A stretch of 64,000 bases of DNA. It comes from Octopus sinensis. Its lineage: Eukaryota. This document shows positions 3,375 to 58,919 of the stretch, piece by piece. Both the position numbers and the translations under genes were made by a program. Where the stretch lies: contig NC_043016.1 in assembly GCF_006345805.1 (NCBI RefSeq), positions 21,328,001 to 21,392,000 of the forward strand, read 5' to 3'. The notes under the pieces are model-generated. The model was not told the origin of the DNA. It did no database searches and saw only the letters and a list, made by a program, of their open reading frames with translations. Within the stretch, counting starts at the first letter, position 1. The number at the start of each line of letters is the position of its first letter.

Positions 3375-6036
3375 CAGAGCTGGGTTTAAGTCCATTAATC
3401 CATTAATCATTAATTAATGAAGTTAACATTCGCATTAAGGATTTAACTTTTAAGTTAACTTTGAAAATCATTATTGGACTAATTAACTTCTGTTACATTC
3501 AGCTTCCATTAACCCAAGTCCGTTAACCCAAAAATTTCATGAAAACCGGTAAACGTTTAAAAGTTTCTATTGTTTTCAGATTGTCTTAGCATATTTAATA
3601 TTGTACATGTCATTCTTTCAACTCCGATATAATGCCACTTATTATTATAAATAACTTGTAGGACCTCATTTGGCCATGTCTGGATTTGAAACCAAATCCA
3701 CCTGCTTGTTGCTTGCAAAGGTAGTGGGAAATTTCTTTGTCCTGTCAAGAAGGAACAGTGATTGATGTTTTCACTTGATCTGTGACCTCACTGTGTCATG
3801 GAGAGAATTATGTATATATCATGCTTTTCATTATTTTTTTTTTTTTTTTACAGCCACTTTATCAACAAACTTTTTTTTAGTTTAACACTAATATTGTGTT
3901 TCATTTGAGTTTTTTTTTTACCCTTTTCTGGCTCTAAAAGTCTTTAAAAACCTAAAAAAGGGCCAAAATTATGAAATCGCCTTTTTTAGACCCTTTAAAA
4001 TTTGAAACTATAAAATTAGCATTTTTTAACTCTAAAGAAAAAAAAACTATAATTTTAGTGTTCTTAAGCTCTCAAAAAGGCCAAAAAGTTGATTTTATAG
4101 TTTTGGCACTTTTTAACCGTTTGAAAGGTATTTGTATAAAATTTCACTAAAAATGCCTATTTTCCAGAAAGTTGTATCTAATTTGTCTGTGAAATCTTTT
4201 TAAAAAATAAACAAATTACGTTAGTGAATTCTTGTAGCTTTGAAATAACATGAGGGCTTTTCTTCCAGAAAGCACAGAACTGGGAGAAAAGCAAAATTAA
4301 TTGAGGTGAATGTCAACAGAGAAAATATTGACTTCCATAAAGTGGAAAAAATAAATGGAAGGCAAAAAACTGGTAAATATTTTGGTGTGAATGCAAATAG
4401 CAGTTACATGGTAAAAGGGCATGCTAGAAATAGCAGCCAAATCTTTCCTTTTCTGGAAAAAGGAGCTGTTTACACGTGATTTCGATGTCACATTTGTTGA
4501 AAGCAAGCACAAATAACCTGGAAAAGAAAAAAGACCTGTGAAATAAAACACTCTTGGTGGGAACCTTTGAGGTCCCACCACGCCTCCCACCTTTCTTTTC
4601 CAGAGAAAAAGTGGCTTGCTGCAGGTTTGGAAGTCAGATACATTGAATGCACCTGAAAAAACTGTGGAAAAAATTATCCCCCACCGAAGCACAAAATATT
4701 TACTGAAAGAATAAAATCTTGTACCAATTATACTTGTATTTTAATTGACTCAAATTAATGTAACTCATTTTGAAAAGTGTCAAAATTTTTATCAGTTATC
4801 AAAATTTTTATCTGGGATAATTTTAGTAACAAATCAAACAGATAAGATGCATTAAGAATTTCAGTTTTAGTGTTTATCCATAATATTATTGCTTTTACAC
4901 CTGTTGAATAAATTTACCTGCCCATAAATGCCAAATTTACTCAGCAAGATCAGCAAAAATTACACGACTATAAATTTCAAATCTGTATGTAAAAAGTTAT
5001 AAGCAAATATTGTGCTTGAACCTGAATAATTCAAAATAACGTGAACAAATAAGCATTACATTTGACAGATTAATATGAATACTAAAGATGTTTTTAGGTG
5101 TGTTTTTTCTGACACACACACATAACATAACCTTGCCCAGTTGGGACTAGATGTGCGTTACTTTGACATCATTCCATTAAATTTGTTTATGGGGAGAAAA
5201 ATATTGAAAAATATCAATAGATGTGTGAGTGAGAAAGAAACAAGAAGGGAGGTTATGGAATGTGCTAGAAACAACAGCCAGATCTCCCTTAAATCACACA
5301 TTTTCCACTGAAATTATTAACATTTTTTTTTTAGACCAAAAGTGTTTCTCTCACGGGTTTTAAGTGATAGTGAAAAAAAATAAATGGCCAAAATCATGTC
5401 AGGCTGGGGTGGGGACAGCATGGTGGGAGTGAAAAACAATAAATTTTCAAAATTTTTTTCTTTTTTTTTTTTTGTGAAAAGATGCCGCCCATCATTCTGA
5501 AGACTTTGGAGAAAAGCATTGGAAAAAGTCTCCATCAAAACAGAGAAATTCTAACTTATGTGGGCCATCTGATCCAAAATTCTGGTCTCCAGAACCACCT
5601 CTACTTCCAAAAATTTTGCCTACAAATTTCTTTGTAATCTTAATCTACCCCATTTGAAAGGTATTTGTATAAAATTTTTCCAGAAAGTTATGATGGGGAA
5701 AATATCGGGCCTTGTGAATTTTCCGAAACTCCTCTCCCTAACCACTCGGGAAATTTTTTCAAACAAATCTTTACATACACTCAATCTACAGGATATAAGT
5801 GATTATTTGGTGAAGGGTTCATTAGAATGTATCCATTTTTCTGGAAGTTATGAGGCAACAAAGTCAGTGGGGTATTAAACTGTAATTATGTCTTTTTCCA
5901 ATAAAAGTTAACATTAATGGATTAACGTTAACTTCCATTACATTTTCCAAGAATTAACGATTAACAAAGTAAACTTTTTTGTTAATGGATAAATGATTAA
6001 CAAAGTTAACTTTTCGATTAACGGTACCCACCTTTG
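3375..6036. mobile_element. Non-autonomous hAT-type DNA transposon
   Basis: 8-bp TSD CATAAATC at 3367-3374 and 6037-6044. Imperfect TIRs CAGAGCTGGGT / CAAAGGTGGGT (reverse complement), with TTAAC-rich subterminal repeats at both ends. Confidence 0.8.
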
Positions 6037-54208: not shown

Positions 54209-54888
54209 ATAATATATAAAGTGTATATATATGATGTATATATATAATGTGTATATATGTGTAGATATATATATGATGTATATATATATATATATGTGTA
54301 GATATATATATATATGATGTGTAGATATATATATATGATGTGTAGATATATATATATGATGTGTAGATATATATATATGATGTATATATATATATATATG
54401 TGTATGTATATATATATATATATATATATATAAATGTGTGTGTGTGTGTATATATATGTTAGAAGTATTAGGGGTGATGTACAGATTTAATACATATGAA
54501 AGAAAAAAGGTGTTCAGAATGCTGGATGGTTGTAAAAATATATATTTATTTACATATCACATATTCTTTCTTCATATTAGCGCTTTCAACTACTCCTGTA
54601 GTTTCCTGGTGAAACTACAGGAGTAGTTAAAAGCGCTAATATGAAAAAAATAATATGTAATATGTAAATAAATATATATTTTTACAACCATCCATCATTC
54701 TCAACACCTTTTATCAATTCAATAATGAAAACTTAAATGTTGCCATTTAGAAAAATTACGTATTGTAGAAAGATTAAATATAAGATAAAACATATAATGA
54801 TAATTAAGTAATGTGCAAAATAAATAAAACGTATATCTTTGGTAGAATAACTTCTTGACACGTGTTTCGCAGTGTATATATATATGTG

Positions 54889-54923
<35 letters not shown>

Positions 54924-54924
54924 C

Positions 54925-57138
54925 CTCCAGGCAATGACGGAGGAATTCAAGACAGGATGCCCCTGGGAGCTCCTCTATGCTGACAACCTTGCTCTAATTG
55001 CTGAGTTACTATCAGAACTAGAGGAGACGTTTGAGGTGTGGAAACAAGGATTAGAATCGATGACCTTAGAGTCAACCTAGCTAAAACCAAAGTCCTAATA
55101 AGTAGGAAGGCAGGCAAACCACAAATCCCTTCAGGTAGATGGCCCTGCTCGATCTGTAGAAAAGACGTAGGTAGAAACTCTATAAGATGTACCCAGTGTA
55201 AGCTATGGGTACATCTAGTTTTTAGTCAAGTCGGCGGGGCACTTATGTACCTAGAGTGGAAATGGCCCGTAATCCACCCCAGGGGAAGGTATATCATCGG
55301 CCAAACGTGGAGGGGCAGCACCCTCAGCCTGGTATGCGGGCCCCGTCCTTAGACCCACAAACCGTGTGTTTTTAAACTTATAGTTGTTTAATCAAACTGC
55401 AAAGCAGGCAATTGCCATGAGCACGTGGTCAAAACGATTAAGAAGGCGAAGTACCATCCCTCGGGAAAAGCAGGCAAACCACTTTCCTAGCCAACCAGAC
55501 AGGCACCCGAGTGCAGATTATGAAGGGCTCCAAACCAGCAGCGTATCCACCCGTTATTAGAAGTGTGATTTAAGCAGAGCAAATTCTAGTAGTGCCCCCT
55601 CGAGACGGTAAGGTTTCACACACCGGTAGAGCCCAATGGCGAATCCACCTGCCAGCTGGCAATCAGCAGGTCATAGCACATTGGGCCTCACCAACACAAG
55701 CAGGGCTAAGCACGCCAAACAGCCCTAGTGGTGAATCCACCTGTACCCAAACCAGGTCATAATTAACGGGTCTCTGCATACACCATAAATACGGGTCGTA
55801 GCAAACCAGTCGTCGACTATTGAGTTTCATTAGACTCTAGAAAGAGGCCATTCTGATATACAACCAGAACTGCCCAAAGACAACAGTCTCAACCAAATAT
55901 CGACCGAATCGCACATTCGCGACTAATGCATGTATGATCCTTGAAAAATGATCTACACCCTGGTGAACTGTTCGCGAACTAGGATGCAGTCATTCAAATC
56001 CAAGGGCCACCAACGCAACACTACACCCAAGTGAAAGCTGATTTTGGACAACTAGAAGGCCGAAAAGCGGACGCATGCCATCCACAGACAGAAATGCTCA
56101 CACCTCTCAACCATGATCAACTACGTGCTGCATGGCCCCCCACCAAATAATTGGAACTGCGTTGGGGCTGGACACTTATAGTTGGTCCGCGCAAGAGCAT
56201 CTACCCACTAGTATGCACCTGCACGGATGTAAGCTCTTTCACCATAACAAGGTAGTGTCCATGTGGGTGAAGCCTGGCAGTGAATCCATCTACCAGGTTA
56301 ACCCCGGCAAATCATAACATACCAGACAAACCCGATGGTGCATCCACCCACCACACCACCTCACTGCCGATGTTCCAATAGGGCACCACAGGTGTATATA
56401 CCCACAAACGCCACTCACAGTAATGTTCCTATAGGACACCACCAGTGCCCTCACACGAAACTCAAGCCTAAACAGCACCGAATGAGATCACCCATAGTGA
56501 AAAGAGTCATAAGTATACACACCCATTGCGAGGGGGGGCAGTGGGTCATAACCATCAAGCCTCACGAAAGAGCTATAAATAACACTGAAAATGTGCAGAG
56601 AAGAACTTCTGCCACATTCCAGGGAGAAAAACTTGAAGTAGTTGATAGCTTCCGTTACCTAGGTGATCAAGTCAGTAGTGGGGGAGGGTGCGCTGAAAGT
56701 GTAGTTGCTAGAATACGAATAGTCTGCGCTAAGTTCAGAGAGCTCTTACCTCTGCTGGTGACAAAGGGTCTCTCGCTCAGAGTAAAAGGTAGACTGTACG
56801 ACGCATGTGTACAAACAGCCATGCTACATGGCAGTGAAACATGGGCTGTGACTGCTGAGGACATGCGTAAGCTTGCAAGGAATGAAGTCAGCATTCTCCG
56901 ATTGATGTGTAATGTCAGTGTTCATACTCGATAGATTGTAAGTACCTTGAGAGAAAGGTTGGACCTAAGAAGCATCAGATGTGTGCAAGAGAGACATTTG
57001 CGCTGGTATGGTCATATGGTGAGGATAGCTGTGTGAAAAAGTGCCACACCCTAGCAGTTGAGGGAACCTGTGGAAGAGGTAGACCCAGGAAGACCTGGGA
57101 CGAGATGGTGAAGTATGACCTTTAAACATTGGGCCTCA

Positions 57139-57142
<4 letters not shown>
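54925..57142 (+). mobile_element. RTE LINE RT C-terminal region, interrupted by a 1.36-kb unrelated insert
   Basis: GCPWELLYADNL; GRWPCSICRKDVGRNSIRC; EKLEVVDSFRYLGDQVS; MLHGSETW; RWYGH; GRGRPRKTW. Confidence 0.9.
55215..56575. other. Unclassified GC-rich insert (roughly 50% GC by eye) with repeated structured motifs
   Basis: Sharp compositional contrast with the window, no recognisable protein domain, and internal degenerate repeats (see findings). Confidence 0.75.
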
Positions 57143-57172
<30 letters not shown>

Positions 57173-58919
57173 TGTGTATATATATCTGCACATATATGTA
57201 TATATATATATATATATATAGATGTATATGTATACATGCATTTGTACAGATGTATAGATGCATATGTATAGATGTATGTATATATGCATGTATATATGGA
57301 TATTATTCAACCACAGCAGTGGTTGAATATATTCTTAAATTCACGAGTTCGTCAATCACAGCAGCTTCCAAGCTTCACCACTAATTCAGTTCTCAACTAT
57401 ATTGCAAATTGTTAATAGTTTTAAAGAGGACACCTCCTCAGCTACACTTTGACATAAATAGTTTGAGATTTGATTCAGTAGAAAAAAAGTTACATCAAAA
57501 TATCTGCAACCTCAATGGGGGCACTAAGGCAGGTATTCATCTTCAAGTAACAAACATTTTAATTTTAAATTAAAAGTATAATTTTCTTAGGCTTATATGA
57601 TAGAAATATGCATGACGAATTCAGAATCACTAGTCGCATTGAACAAAAATTAGCAGAAAAAGAGTTATGGGGTAAAATGTCATGAAATTTCATGTCAGCA
57701 ATTAAGGGTGTAACGCTTAAGAATAAAGAATATATTTCTAAAATGAATGTTTACAATGAGCTGGCAGAAATATTAGTGCACCGGGTGAAATGCTTAATGG
57801 TATATCATCTGTCTTTATGTTATTGTGTTCAAATTTTGCTGAGGTTGACTTTGACATACAGATTATTTAATTTTTTTTTTAACTAAACACTTTCAAACTT
57901 CTGATACAGTAGAATATGTGACATAGAACAGGGTTTATTCTTAATGTTTTTGACAAAATTTTGTATTTTAGAAGCGGTATTTCATCTGTTTTTATGTTCT
58001 GAGTTCAAATTCTGCTGAGGTCTCTGTTGTTGGAGCACCTTCAGTATGGGTATCATTCACACTTCTATCTGTATTTGTGAAGATTGCATCTAGTCTTGAA
58101 ATAAGTAAATTTAACTTATTAGATATTTCTGTGAGAAGTTCTATATTTTTTGGTGTTTCTCAACTGTGAGTTTGAATTGTGTTCCATTCATTCTGGCGTC
58201 TTGTACATCCAAGGAGATATGTATAGAGTGTTAGGTGTAATGTACAGAATTGAATATTGAGAAAATAAAAAGTTGTCAGAATTTTGGAAACAAATCCTTT
58301 GATATCTTATTTTTAGCGCTTTCATTTCATTCTAGAATTTTTCAAATACAATTTTATGAATGTACAAACAGCTTATTCATTTATAGAAAACATGTTTTTT
58401 TGGGGTTTAGTTTAGAAAACGTTTGTTTTTTTGCGTTCCAAGACAATGGAGATGGATAAATAGAAATATAGGTAGATGGATAGATAGATAGATAGATAGT
58501 CAGACAGATAGATAGATGAGTAGAAGCAAAGATAGAGAGAAGGGGCATCCACCTTCCTATTCACCATTCATTCATTGAGAAATTACAACCATGTTTCATG
58601 GTTTGCTACCTCAACAGCTCCTTTATAGGATCCAGTGGCTAAAGACATCATCAGGAGGAACCATGTCCGGTTTCGGCCCCTACTCTTCTACCGTTTTCGA
58701 CGTGGCGGGGGCCCCACTTTCGGAAGTGTCTTCAGCTCTGGTGTTGAGTGCATTTCTTCTTTCTCCTTCTGTCCTCTTCGATGCAGCATCGAGTGTCAGC
58801 AGGCGACTGACCATCCTGCCAAATTTCATTTTAAATACTCGGTAAGCTCCAGCACCAGTTAGTTGTCTAGTGACACTGTCTAAACTTCAAATGACCAATG
58901 AGAAGGGCGTGTAATCTTA

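What the first reader, a model, noticed from the sequence alone, without database searches (positions are those of the whole stretch)
55263..56563. Array of an unrecognised covarying two-stem internal-loop motif, folding on the minus strand
Seen: the hexamer ATCCAC occurs 6 times in about 1.36 kb (55272, 55545, 55643, 55735, 56080, 56342), against about 0.3 expected at uniform composition. Read on the minus strand, the copies share the layout P1 - UGYUAUG - P2 hairpin - GGAUNCRC - P1'. The stem sequences differ between copies but pairing is kept. 55631-55686: GCCCAATG-TGCTATG-ACCTGC(13 nt)GCAGGT-GGATTCGC-CATTGGGC. 56272-56327: GTCTGGTA-TGTTATG-ATTTGCC(11)GGTAGAT-GGATTCAC-TGCCAGGC, where four pairs are G-U wobbles and would be A-C mismatches on the plus strand. 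55263-55303: TGGCCGA-TGATAT-ACC(9)GGT-GGATTAC-GGGCCA. 55722-55771: P2 ACCTG/CAGGT and a weaker P1. Weaker or partial copies lie at 56504-56563, 56330-56401 and 55533-55551. Inference: conserved unpaired loop nucleotides with freely covarying stems are the signature of a functional RNA or ssDNA element, such as a ribozyme, a protein-binding site or a replication/packaging signal. I cannot match it to hammerhead, HDV, twister, pistol, hatchet or SECIS consensus, although a tandem G-A (kink-turn-like) pairing of UGA with GGA is possible.
Basis: partly seen in the sequence, partly recalled or inferred. Interest (0 to 1): 0.82.

Follow-up and report, generated by a model that had tools for sequence, protein, structure and literature searches.

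The report
R2 retrotransposon ribozyme leader hairpins

Summary
Window 55215-56572 is a 1.36-kb insert, antisense inside an abundant LINE, where it replaces 67 bp. Its sense strand is the window's minus strand. It is an internally deleted, non-autonomous (SIDE-type) copy of an A-clade R2 retrotransposon. It starts at the R2 RNA 5' end and lacks the 3' UTR.

Related copies sit at the canonical 28S site, and full-length relatives encode ZF/Myb-RT-RLE proteins that match solved R2 structures.

The motif is genuine: P1, a UGUUAUG loop, a P2 hairpin, a GGAUNCAC loop, then P1'. A covariance model finds it in the window only at 56272-56327, 55631-55686 and, degenerate, at 55723-55770. All three hits are on the minus strand. 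Across 36 distinct copies, 90% of cells pair, against 33-47% in slid controls. Both-sided changes occur in 14 of 18 pairs.

The sites at 55263-55303 and 55533-55551 are not supported.

New here: the first two copies form the J1/2 linker of an HDV-like R2 ribozyme spanning 56572-56170. Its active site, ACC-UUGUCGU-GGU, compares with Drosophila ACC-UCCUCGU-GGU. P1 covaries in four haplotypes.

The motif's own function is untested. Most likely it is a reiterated protein-binding or folding module.

The parts
55215..56572 (-). Whole insert. It is an internally deleted (SIDE-type) R2 retrotransposon copy, complete at its RNA 5' end. It lacks the last ~45-70 nt of the ORF remnant and the whole ~370-nt 3' UTR. 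It replaces 67 bp of the host LINE.
   Evidence: Host homology ends at 55214 and resumes at 56570. The intact host copy L041 carries 67 bp in its place. The 5' end equals the R2 5' end seen at 28S junctions. The 3' truncation is shown by alignment with relatives.
56566..56572 (-). Ribozyme P1 5' strand, CUCUUUC. This is the predicted first nucleotides of the self-cleaved RNA. Positions 56570-56572 (CTC) are a microhomology shared with the host.
   Evidence: It pairs perfectly with GAAAGAG at 56240-56234. Relatives carry CUCUUAA/UUAAGAG, CUCUUAC/GUAAGAG and CUCUCUU/AAGAGAG. L027, another non-rDNA copy, also starts at CTCTTTC.
56330..56560 (-). Large motif copy 0. P1* is GCUUGAU (56560-56554) with AUCGGGU (56336-56330). 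The loops are GGUUAUG (56553-56547) and GGAUGCACC (56345-56337). P2* is ACCCAC (56546-56541) with GUGGGU (56351-56346). It encloses a ~190-nt insert.
   Evidence: Read from the sequence. The same halves occur in relatives with compensatory changes: L015 has GCCUGAU/AUCAGGU and L027 has ACCUACUG/CAGUGGGU. In L033 and L035 a simple hairpin copy occupies this position.
56272..56327 (-). Motif copy 1: GUCUGGUA-UGUUAUG-AUUUGCCGGG(5)CCUGGUAGAU-GGAUUCAC-UGCCAGGC. It is the last element of the ribozyme J1/2 linker.
   Evidence: Fold z = -4.8. Covariance model score 71.7 bits. Orthologous copies are present in more than 15 loci.
56170..56260 (-). HDV-like ribozyme core. P2 is GGACAC at 56260-56255. P3 is ACC at 56253-56251. 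L3 is UUGUUAU at 56250-56244 (the family consensus is UUGUCGU). P3' is GGU at 56243-56241. P1' is GAAAGAG at 56240-56234. P4 spans about 56230-56185. J4/2 is CAACUAUAA at 56184-56176. P2' is GUGUCC at 56175-56170.
   Evidence: The block is conserved across all subfamilies. 90.6% of cells pair, against 36-50% in slid controls, with both-sided changes in P1, P2 and P4. The Drosophila R2 catalytic consensus is ACC-TCCTCGT-GGT and its J4/2 carries a stop codon (PMC3414825).
55723..55770 (-). Motif copy 2, in the 5' UTR downstream of the ribozyme. P2 is ACCUG/CAGGU, the loops are UUAUG and GGAUUCAC, and P1 has decayed.
   Evidence: Covariance model 26.6 bits, E = 5e-4; this site was not used to build the model. 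On its own it does not fold as the motif (z = +0.3).
55631..55686 (-). Motif copy 3: GCCCAAUG-UGCUAUG-ACCUGCUG(9)UGGCAGGU-GGAUUCGC-CAUUGGGC.
   Evidence: Fold z = -2.7. Covariance model 62.6 bits. Its stems are entirely different from those of copy 1.
55215..55411 (-). Remnant of the R2 ORF start (ATG mutated to TTG at 55411-55409), fused by the old internal deletion to a remnant of the ORF 3' end.
   Evidence: Alignment with SIDE copies L029, L034, L015 and the full-length L013.
54925..55214 (+). Left part of the host LINE: reverse-transcriptase C-terminal region with a Cys-rich finger.
   Evidence: At least 40 scored copies at 93-95% identity, from 2934 first-look candidates. ORF read directly from the sequence.
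56570..56934 (+). Right part of the host LINE.
   Evidence: At least 40 scored copies at 92-94% identity. The ORF is continuous in the intact copy L041.

Best explanation
Shown.
- The region is a fossil copy of a non-autonomous, internally deleted R2 retrotransposon. It is inserted antisense in a LINE.
- Its sense (minus-strand) RNA is the R2 5' leader.

Strongly inferred.
- The first ~400 nt form an HDV-like self-cleaving ribozyme.
- In rDNA copies, this ribozyme would cut the 28S/R2 co-transcript just 5' of CUCUU(A/U)(A/C).
Other subfamilies have two or three plain hairpin copies here.
- One to four further copies lie 500-650 nt downstream, before the ORF start.

The motif.
- It is a hairpin with two covarying stems around a conserved internal loop.
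- The loop is most simply UAUG opposite GGAU. A short UG(U)/(G)CA extension of P1 and a bulged C flank it.

Inferred and untested: how the motif works.
- About 40%: each copy is a docking site for a protein. That protein would be the R2 protein's 5'-RNA binding activity or a host nucleolar factor. Reiteration would give avidity.
- About 30%: it is a rigid folding module that brings P1 and P2 together, with loop-mediated tertiary contacts.
- About 15%: it serves cap-independent translation.

The window copy itself is inactive:
- it lies outside rDNA;
- it has lost the 3' UTR;
- its L3 reads UUGUUAU, so the conserved C-G dinucleotide is gone.
For: Identity as R2.
- Relatives of the insert end at ...|TAGCCAAATGCCTCGTCATC and begin at GACTCTCTTAAG|TGGGGCTTGATGG inside 28S genes.
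- The parent ORFs hit solved R2 proteins: 9nl2, 9nl3 and 9dou (RT 2e-62, ZF/Myb 6e-23, RLE 2e-12).
- The SIDE architecture was read in L029.

The motif.
- The model gives specific hits on the sense strand only.
- The pattern has 51 genome matches, against 2 for the reversed control.
- Covariation is supported, and by an independent MAFFT/RNAalifold run.
- Loops are more conserved than stems.
- The motif is present upstream of the ORF in full-length elements of this genome (L013 7376-7501) and of Octopus vulgaris (L050).

The ribozyme.
- The block GGACAC-U-ACC-UUGUCGU-GGU-P1'-...-AACUAAAN-GUGUCC is conserved.
- There are four complementary P1/P1' haplotypes.
- The active site and the J4/2 stop codon match Drosophila R2 (PMC3414825).
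- R2 ribozymes often use upstream 28S sequence as P1 and have variable J1/2 and P4 regions (PMC3774820).
- Two independent non-rDNA copies begin exactly at the predicted cleavage site.

A cis-acting role rather than a translational one.
- The SIDE lineage has no ORF. All copies share one deletion junction, and it has diverged to about 72-76% identity. It still keeps both motif zones.
Against: - No self-cleavage or binding experiment exists.
- Rfam's HDV-type models do not hit the region, as expected with a 330-nt J1/2.
- P1.1 is at best one C-G pair plus a U-U opposition.
- J4/2 is longer than in HDV.
- The mini-ribozyme alignment (A3) was made by removing J1/2 by hand. Five of its 14 rows lack a P1 partner because they are not in a 28S context.
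- The covariance-model alignment (A2) is fitted to the model.
- The motif was found only in Octopus. R2 elements at about 30% protein identity from other organisms lack it, so its antiquity is unknown.
- The window copy lacks the R2 3' end and is not at a 28S site. How it was inserted is unexplained.
Confidence: 0.85

Rival explanations
1. The motif copies are themselves a new small self-cleaving ribozyme, arrayed in tandem.
For: The loops are conserved and the stems covary. The motif also sits in a retroelement leader, where ribozymes are common.
Against: - A complete HDV-like core with covarying P1, P2 and P4 already accounts for processing.
- Copy number varies from 2 to 7 per element, and position varies too.
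- Independent non-rDNA copies start at the HDV-type P1, not at a motif boundary.
- The loop matches no known ribozyme family in Rfam.
Confidence: 0.03
2. The internal loop is a kink-turn or SECIS-like tandem G-A motif, bound by an L7Ae/SNU13-family protein.
For: The 5' strand carries UAUGA and the 3' strand carries GGA. R2 RNA is made in the nucleolus, where such proteins act.
Against: - Placing G15-A43 and A16-G42 as sheared pairs would break the P2 register, which covariation fixes from C17-G39 onward (CG 20, UA 13). It would leave U40 and G41 bulged on the strand that should be unbulged.
- The would-be C-stem starts with a U-U opposition.
- There are no Rfam hits.
Confidence: 0.07
3. The copies are plain primary-sequence repeats (slippage or duplication products) whose stems are incidental.
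For: Tandem duplication clearly generates new copies. O. vulgaris shows fresh slippage of half-motifs.
Against: - Both-sided changes occur in 14 of 18 pairs. 90% of cells pair, against 33-47% when the partner is slid, and 0 of 500 shuffles reach this.
- Paralogous copies share the loops but not the stem sequences.
- Pairing relies on G-U and is strand-specific.
Confidence: 0.02
4. The array is part of an internal ribosome entry region that lets the uncapped, Pol I-derived R2 RNA be translated.
For: - R2 RNA is a ribozyme-processed rRNA co-transcript.
- Eickbush and Eickbush proposed an IRES role linked to the J4/2 stop codon (PMC3414825).
- The J4/2 UAA is conserved here.
- The zone 2 copies lie between the ribozyme and the ATG.
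Against: The non-coding SIDE lineage has kept and even multiplied the motif through long divergence, although it has nothing to translate.
Confidence: 0.15

Closest known systems
R2 retrotransposon 5' HDV-like ribozyme (Drosophila and other arthropods; Eickbush & Eickbush 2010; PMC3774820)
   Same: - It lies at the 5' end of an R2 element.
- P1 uses upstream 28S sequence.
- P3-L3-P3' is ACC-UxxUCGU-GGU.
- J4/2 carries a C followed by a UAA stop.
- J1/2 is long, and P4 is a variable extended helix.
   Different: - J1/2 here is not a variable loop. It is built from 2-3 copies of one conserved internal-loop hairpin.
- L3 reads UUG where Drosophila and HDV have UCC, so P1.1 is weak.
- The predicted cleavage is 8-10 nt upstream of the junction, not at -28, -13 or 0.
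- Activity has not been tested.
R2 SIDEs (short internally deleted elements) of Drosophila (PMC3414825)
   Same: Both are non-autonomous R2 derivatives with the ORF deleted. Both retain the 5' ribozyme and the 3' UTR, sit at the 28S R2 site, and form a long-lived lineage.
   Different: The octopus SIDE keeps the entire ~1.15-kb 5' UTR and both ORF ends. It is the predominant form among the loci sampled here, whereas Drosophila SIDEs are rare. Some copies, including this one, lie outside rDNA.
Bombyx R2 5' protein-binding RNA (5' PBM; Christensen, Ye & Eickbush 2006, cited from my own knowledge)
   Same: It is a structured RNA near the R2 5' end that the R2 protein binds to direct the second half of integration. 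This is the functional analogue proposed for the motif.
   Different: The Bombyx element is a single pseudoknotted region, not a reiterated hairpin. No sequence similarity is known, and binding has not been tested here.
Kink-turn / SECIS tandem G-A internal loops
   Same: Both are asymmetric purine-containing internal loops between two helices, with UGA on one strand and GA on the other.
   Different: The register fixed by covariation does not allow the canonical tandem sheared G-A pairs next to a 3-nt bulge.

Membership tests
R2 non-LTR retrotransposon (A-clade) / R2 SIDE | Insertion at the 28S rDNA site TTAAGG|TAGCCAAATGCC | tested here: met
   Met for the family: 10 or more related loci have both junctions inside 28S. 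Not met for the window copy, which sits in a LINE.
R2 non-LTR retrotransposon (A-clade) / R2 SIDE | Single ORF with N-terminal zinc fingers plus Myb, a reverse transcriptase, and a C-terminal CCHC plus restriction-like endonuclease | tested here: met
   Full-length relatives (L013, L006) hit solved R2 proteins 9nl2, 9nl3 and 9dou in all three regions. They have three C2H2 fingers. The window copy has the ORF deleted, as a SIDE does.
R2 non-LTR retrotransposon (A-clade) / R2 SIDE | 3' UTR ending at the target site, used for target-primed reverse transcription | tested here: not met
   Present in relatives (L029 4960-5328). Absent from the window copy, which stops about 45-70 nt before the ORF-remnant end.
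HDV-like self-cleaving ribozyme | Nested double pseudoknot: P1, P2, P3 and P4 in the order P1-J1/2-P2-P3-L3-P3'-P1'-P4-J4/2-P2' | tested here: met
   All helices were located. 90.6% of cells pair, against 36-50% in slid controls. Both-sided changes occur in P1, P2 and P4.
HDV-like self-cleaving ribozyme | Conserved L3 (U...UCG) and a catalytic C in J4/2 | tested here: met
   The family consensus is UUGUCGU, with AAC-UAAA before P2'. Drosophila R2 has UCCUCGU. The window copy has UUGUUAU, so the C-G is lost.
HDV-like self-cleaving ribozyme | P1.1 (two pairs between L3 and the nucleotides after P1') | tested here: inconclusive
   Only one C-G pair plus a U-U opposition can be drawn, by inspection.
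HDV-like self-cleaving ribozyme | Self-cleavage immediately 5' of P1 | not testable with these tools
   Indirect support only: two non-rDNA copies (window, L027) start exactly at P1.
HDV-like self-cleaving ribozyme | Match to Rfam HDV-type covariance models | tested here: not met
   No hit at E <= 10 over 54500-57500. This is expected, given the 330-nt J1/2.
Kink-turn | Three-nucleotide bulge followed by tandem sheared G-A/A-G pairs between a canonical and a non-canonical stem | tested here: not met
   Incompatible with the covariation-supported P2 register and with the P1 extension.
Any curated Rfam family | Score at or near the gathering threshold | tested here: not met
   Nothing in the insert except a chance 18.5-bit lncRNA hit. 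Nothing in R2 loci apart from rRNA.

The most novel reading that the evidence does not exclude
The UAUG/GGAU internal-loop hairpin is a previously undescribed cis-acting RNA module of retrotransposon leaders. It would be the docking site for the R2 protein, or for a nucleolar host factor, on the 5' end of R2 RNA. It is multiplied for avidity and is needed for mobilising both R2 and its non-coding SIDE parasites. A second, unrelated dispersed repeat family in the same genome carries the same loops at its 5' end. This suggests the module can be captured by other elements.
Probability: 0.3. Interest if true: 0.6.

Novelty: new variant of a known kind. Interest (0 to 1): 0.45.

Why it matters
R2 is the main model for site-specific target-primed reverse transcription and is being engineered for transgene insertion. 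How R2 RNA 5' ends are recognised, and how second-strand steps are organised, is still poorly understood. A mollusc R2 whose ribozyme linker and leader are built from a reiterated, strongly conserved internal-loop hairpin offers a defined and easily mutated candidate recognition element. It is kept even by non-coding parasites of R2. It also extends SIDE-type elements and R2 ribozymes to cephalopods. The window locus itself has no functional consequence, because the copy is dead.

Tried and rejected
1. Rfam. A permissive scan over the region and over relatives found nothing but low-complexity miRNA artefacts and rRNA.
2. Coding exon or gene-family repeat. No frame is open.
3. First reading: that the insert was the R2 3' UTR, or a 1.6-kb tandem unit on contig C9332. 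This was abandoned once the 28S junctions showed that the element boundaries lie elsewhere.
4. Ribozyme P1 at the -28 site used by many arthropod R2s. No partner was found.
5. A generic HDV descriptor first suggested P3 = CAC/GUG and P1 = CUUAAGU. The family alignment showed P2 = GGACAC/GUGUCC and P3 = ACC/GGU instead.
6. Kink-turn, SECIS, loop E and the 11-nt tetraloop receptor were compared by inspection. None fits.
7. A resemblance of AUGA..GGAU to 28S sequence downstream of the R2 site was judged to be chance.
10. R2 elements at about 30% protein identity from other organisms (L051-L053) have no motif.
11. The second repeat family that carries the motif has no ORF, rRNA or known RNA nearby.
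Full report
**1. The observation**

ATCCAC occurs six times on the + strand between 55272 and 56347. Within the 1358-bp insert, 0.55-0.71 occurrences are expected, and none of 2000 dinucleotide-preserving shuffles reaches six.

The plus strand of the wobble-rich copy does not fold (z = -0.8).

A strict descriptor finds the motif nowhere else in the 64-kb window on either strand. I built a covariance model (R1) from eight copies. It finds three sites in the window:
- 56272-56327, which was used in training;
- 55631-55686, which was used in training;
- 55723-55770, an independent hit (26.6 bits, E = 5e-4) whose P1 has decayed.

The model does not find 55263-55303 or 55533-55551.

**2. What the 1.36-kb segment is**

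The segment is GC-rich (48% against about 30% in the flanks). It interrupts a LINE reverse-transcriptase ORF.

The host LINE is extremely abundant. Homology to it stops at 55214 and resumes at 56570. Intact copies carry 67 bp where the window has the insert (L041; ORF).

Parts of the insert recur elsewhere in the window's own 2.72-Gb genome at 66-90% identity. Many of these relatives lie inside 28S rRNA genes:
- They end at ...|TAGCCAAATGCCTCGTCATC, the canonical R2 site.
- They begin at GACTCTCTTAAG|TGGGGCTTGATGGTTATGACCCAC.
- Rfam confirms large-subunit rRNA on both sides.

On contig C9332 the same leader precedes ORFs with three C2H2 fingers, a Myb domain, a reverse transcriptase, a CCHC motif and a restriction-like endonuclease. 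These ORFs match solved R2 proteins (9nl2, 9nl3, 9dou R2Tg) at 2e-62, 6e-23 and 2e-12. The nearest protein on record, at 89% identity, is from Octopus vulgaris.

Most sampled copies are not full length. L029 shows their structure:
- a ~1.15-kb 5' UTR;
- the first ~130 nt of the ORF, fused to its last ~130 nt;
- a ~370-nt 3' UTR with two long U tracts.

This is the SIDE architecture described for Drosophila (PMC3414825). All subfamilies share the same deletion junction although they have diverged to about 72-76% identity.

The window insert is such a SIDE, with its sense strand on the window's minus strand. Its 5' end is complete. It stops about 45-70 nt before the end of the ORF remnant and has no 3' UTR. 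It is therefore not a standard R2 integration. I could not establish how it got there.

**3. The motif across the family**

R1 finds 47 hits in 23 related loci plus the window. All full-length hits are on the element's sense strand. There are up to five copies per element (L033, L034).

On the model-fitted alignment of 36 distinct rows:
- 89.8% of cells pair, against 33-47% when the 3' partner is slid;
- 14 of 18 pairs show changes on both sides;
- no shuffle out of 500 reaches the observed values.

An independent MAFFT plus RNAalifold run on 20 diverse copies recovers P1 and the base of P2, leaves the same loops open, and finds both-sided changes in 8 of 11 pairs.

The loops carry more information (1.60-1.64 bits per position) than the stems (1.04-1.43).

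A UG(U)/(G)CA extension of P1 with a bulged C is compatible with the data but almost invariant. That would reduce the true loop to UAUG opposite GGAU.

An IUPAC pattern for the loops plus the P2 ends has 51 matches in the genome, against 2 for the reversed control.

The motif precedes the ORF in full-length elements of this genome (L013 7376-7501) and in four tandem R2 copies of O. vulgaris. R2 elements at about 30% protein identity from other organisms lack it.

**4. The ribozyme context**

Immediately 3' of motif copy 1, every subfamily has a nearly invariant block:

CUUCACCC-N4-GGACAC-U-ACC-UUGUCGU-GGU-N7-CUUACG ... GGAC-(A/U)AACUAAAN-GUGUCC

I read this block as follows:
- GGACAC and GUGUCC are complementary (P2).
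- ACC and GGU form P3.
- UUGUCGU is L3.
- The seven nucleotides after GGU are P1'.

The seven-nucleotide P1' is complementary to the sequence at the very 5' boundary, in four different versions:

| P1 | P1' | Where |
|---|---|---|
| CUCUUAA | UUAAGAG | L018, L031, L032 |
| CUCUUAC | GUAAGAG | L017, L020, L024 |
| CUCUUUC | GAAAGAG | window, L027 |
| CUCUCUU | AAGAGAG | full-length lineage, L013b and O. vulgaris, whose 28S junction is shifted by the same two bases |

I made an alignment of 14 mini-ribozymes by removing J1/2 by hand. On it, the fold P1/P2/P3/P4 pairs in 90.6% of cells, against 36-50% in slid controls, with both-sided changes in P1, P2 and P4.

Comparison with published R2 ribozymes:
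- The Drosophila R2 catalytic consensus, taken from published primers, is ACC-TCCTCGT-GGT.
- Drosophila J4/2 carries a stop codon, as AAC-UAA does here (PMC3414825).
- R2 ribozymes commonly recruit upstream 28S sequence as P1 and have variable J1/2 and P4 regions (PMC3774820).

Two independent non-rDNA copies, the window and L027, begin exactly with CTCTTTC. That is expected for cDNA of a ribozyme-processed RNA.

Remaining weaknesses:
- P1.1 is doubtful.
- Rfam HDV models do not hit.
- Cleavage is untested.
- In the window copy L3 reads UUGUUAU, so this copy is probably inactive.

**5. Where the motif copies sit**

The linker between P1 and P2 consists of motif copies.

In the window and most SIDEs, it holds two copies:
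- A large copy. Its P1* (56560-56554 with 56336-56330) and P2* (56546-56541 with 56351-56346) close a 231-nt domain. Compensatory changes occur in L015 and L027.
- Hairpin copy 1, which follows it.

In L033 the linker is three plain hairpins. In L035 and the full-length lineage it is two.

A second zone of one to four copies lies between the ribozyme and the ORF start. In the window these are 55723-55770 and 55631-55686. In L034 they span 3957-4153.

**6. Mechanism**

Shown: the motif's identity, strand, structure and location.

Inferred: the ribozyme.

Hypothesis only: the job of the module.

I favour a reiterated protein-docking site, either for the R2 protein's 5' RNA binding or for a nucleolar host factor. 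Three observations point that way:
- the loop letters are under stronger constraint than the stems;
- copy number turns over;
- the non-coding SIDE lineage has kept both zones.

SIDE retention argues against a purely translational role. A folding or scaffold role for the ribozyme and an IRES role remain open.

**7. Comparison and novelty**

R2, SIDEs and HDV-like R2 ribozymes are known kinds. The new points are:
- a ribozyme linker and leader built from a conserved, reiterated internal-loop hairpin;
- its occurrence in a cephalopod;
- a long-lived SIDE lineage that keeps the whole leader.

I found no description of the motif in the papers searched. I rate this a new variant of a known kind, of moderate interest. 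The window locus itself is a fossil.

Noticed in passing
L044-L049 (G000 C10:95172324, C12:61698868, C18:7217071, C11752:20348, C12228:5588, C12825:4529): A second, low-copy dispersed repeat family carries one copy of the same motif: UCAGG-UAAGGUUAUG-AUCCGC...GCGGAU-GGAUKCACCC-CCUGG. Its P2 is unrelated and longer. In three copies the unrelated flank ends just before TTCAGG, so the motif sits at that element's 5' end. There is no ORF, rRNA or Rfam family nearby. The family also contains a reiterated GGCACCG(N)CCAC(N)UAAUA(N)ACCGG unit.
   Followed up: partly
L013 and L019 (G000 C9332:56000-74000); L050 (O. vulgaris OX597831.1): Full-length R2 and SIDE copies are arranged head to tail with little or no 28S sequence between the 3' UTR end of one copy and the 5' end of the next. 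They form tandem arrays with a period of about 7 kb.
   Followed up: partly
L050 22330-22480 and 35200-35260: In O. vulgaris the half-motifs CCTGGTATGTTATGA and GGTAGATGCACTGCCA are expanded 3-4 times by slippage around one hairpin. This shows how new copies arise.
   Followed up: no
window 56370-56394 and 56423-56447 (minus strand): Inside the large motif copy there is a tandem pair of a second conserved hairpin, GGUG(Y)CCUAU(W)GGAACA. It is also present in relatives (L029 3706-3730).
   Followed up: no
L029 4970-5055; L013 5290-5390: The R2 3' UTR contains two long U tracts on the sense strand (19-41 nt). This is unusual for an R2 3' UTR.
   Followed up: no
L014, L021, L022, L023 (G000 C18 and C11612): One group of rDNA-resident SIDE copies has an identical 5' deletion: the junction is CTCTT|GACCCACG, with about 20 nt missing and P1 shortened. 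This suggests amplification of a defective copy by rDNA turnover rather than by retrotransposition.
   Followed up: no
G000 C18:3.79-4.59 Mb, C16:28.1 Mb, C14:24.96 Mb, C27:19.9 Mb: 28S units that carry SIDE inserts are scattered on several chromosome-scale contigs. Some have the 28S variant CTCTTACG, matched by the compensating ribozyme P1' GUAAGAG.
   Followed up: partly
window 54863-54937 and 57089-57354: The Rfam miRNA hits (mir-297, mir-466, mir-3149 and others) all lie on (TA)n/(TG)n microsatellites flanking the host LINE. All are far below their gathering scores, so they are low-complexity artefacts.
   Followed up: yes
window 55185-55216: The host LINE carries an 11-nt perfect inverted repeat (AGATGTACCCA / TGGGTACATCT) directly at the left junction of the insert. 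A possible role in the break or insertion was not examined.
   Followed up: no
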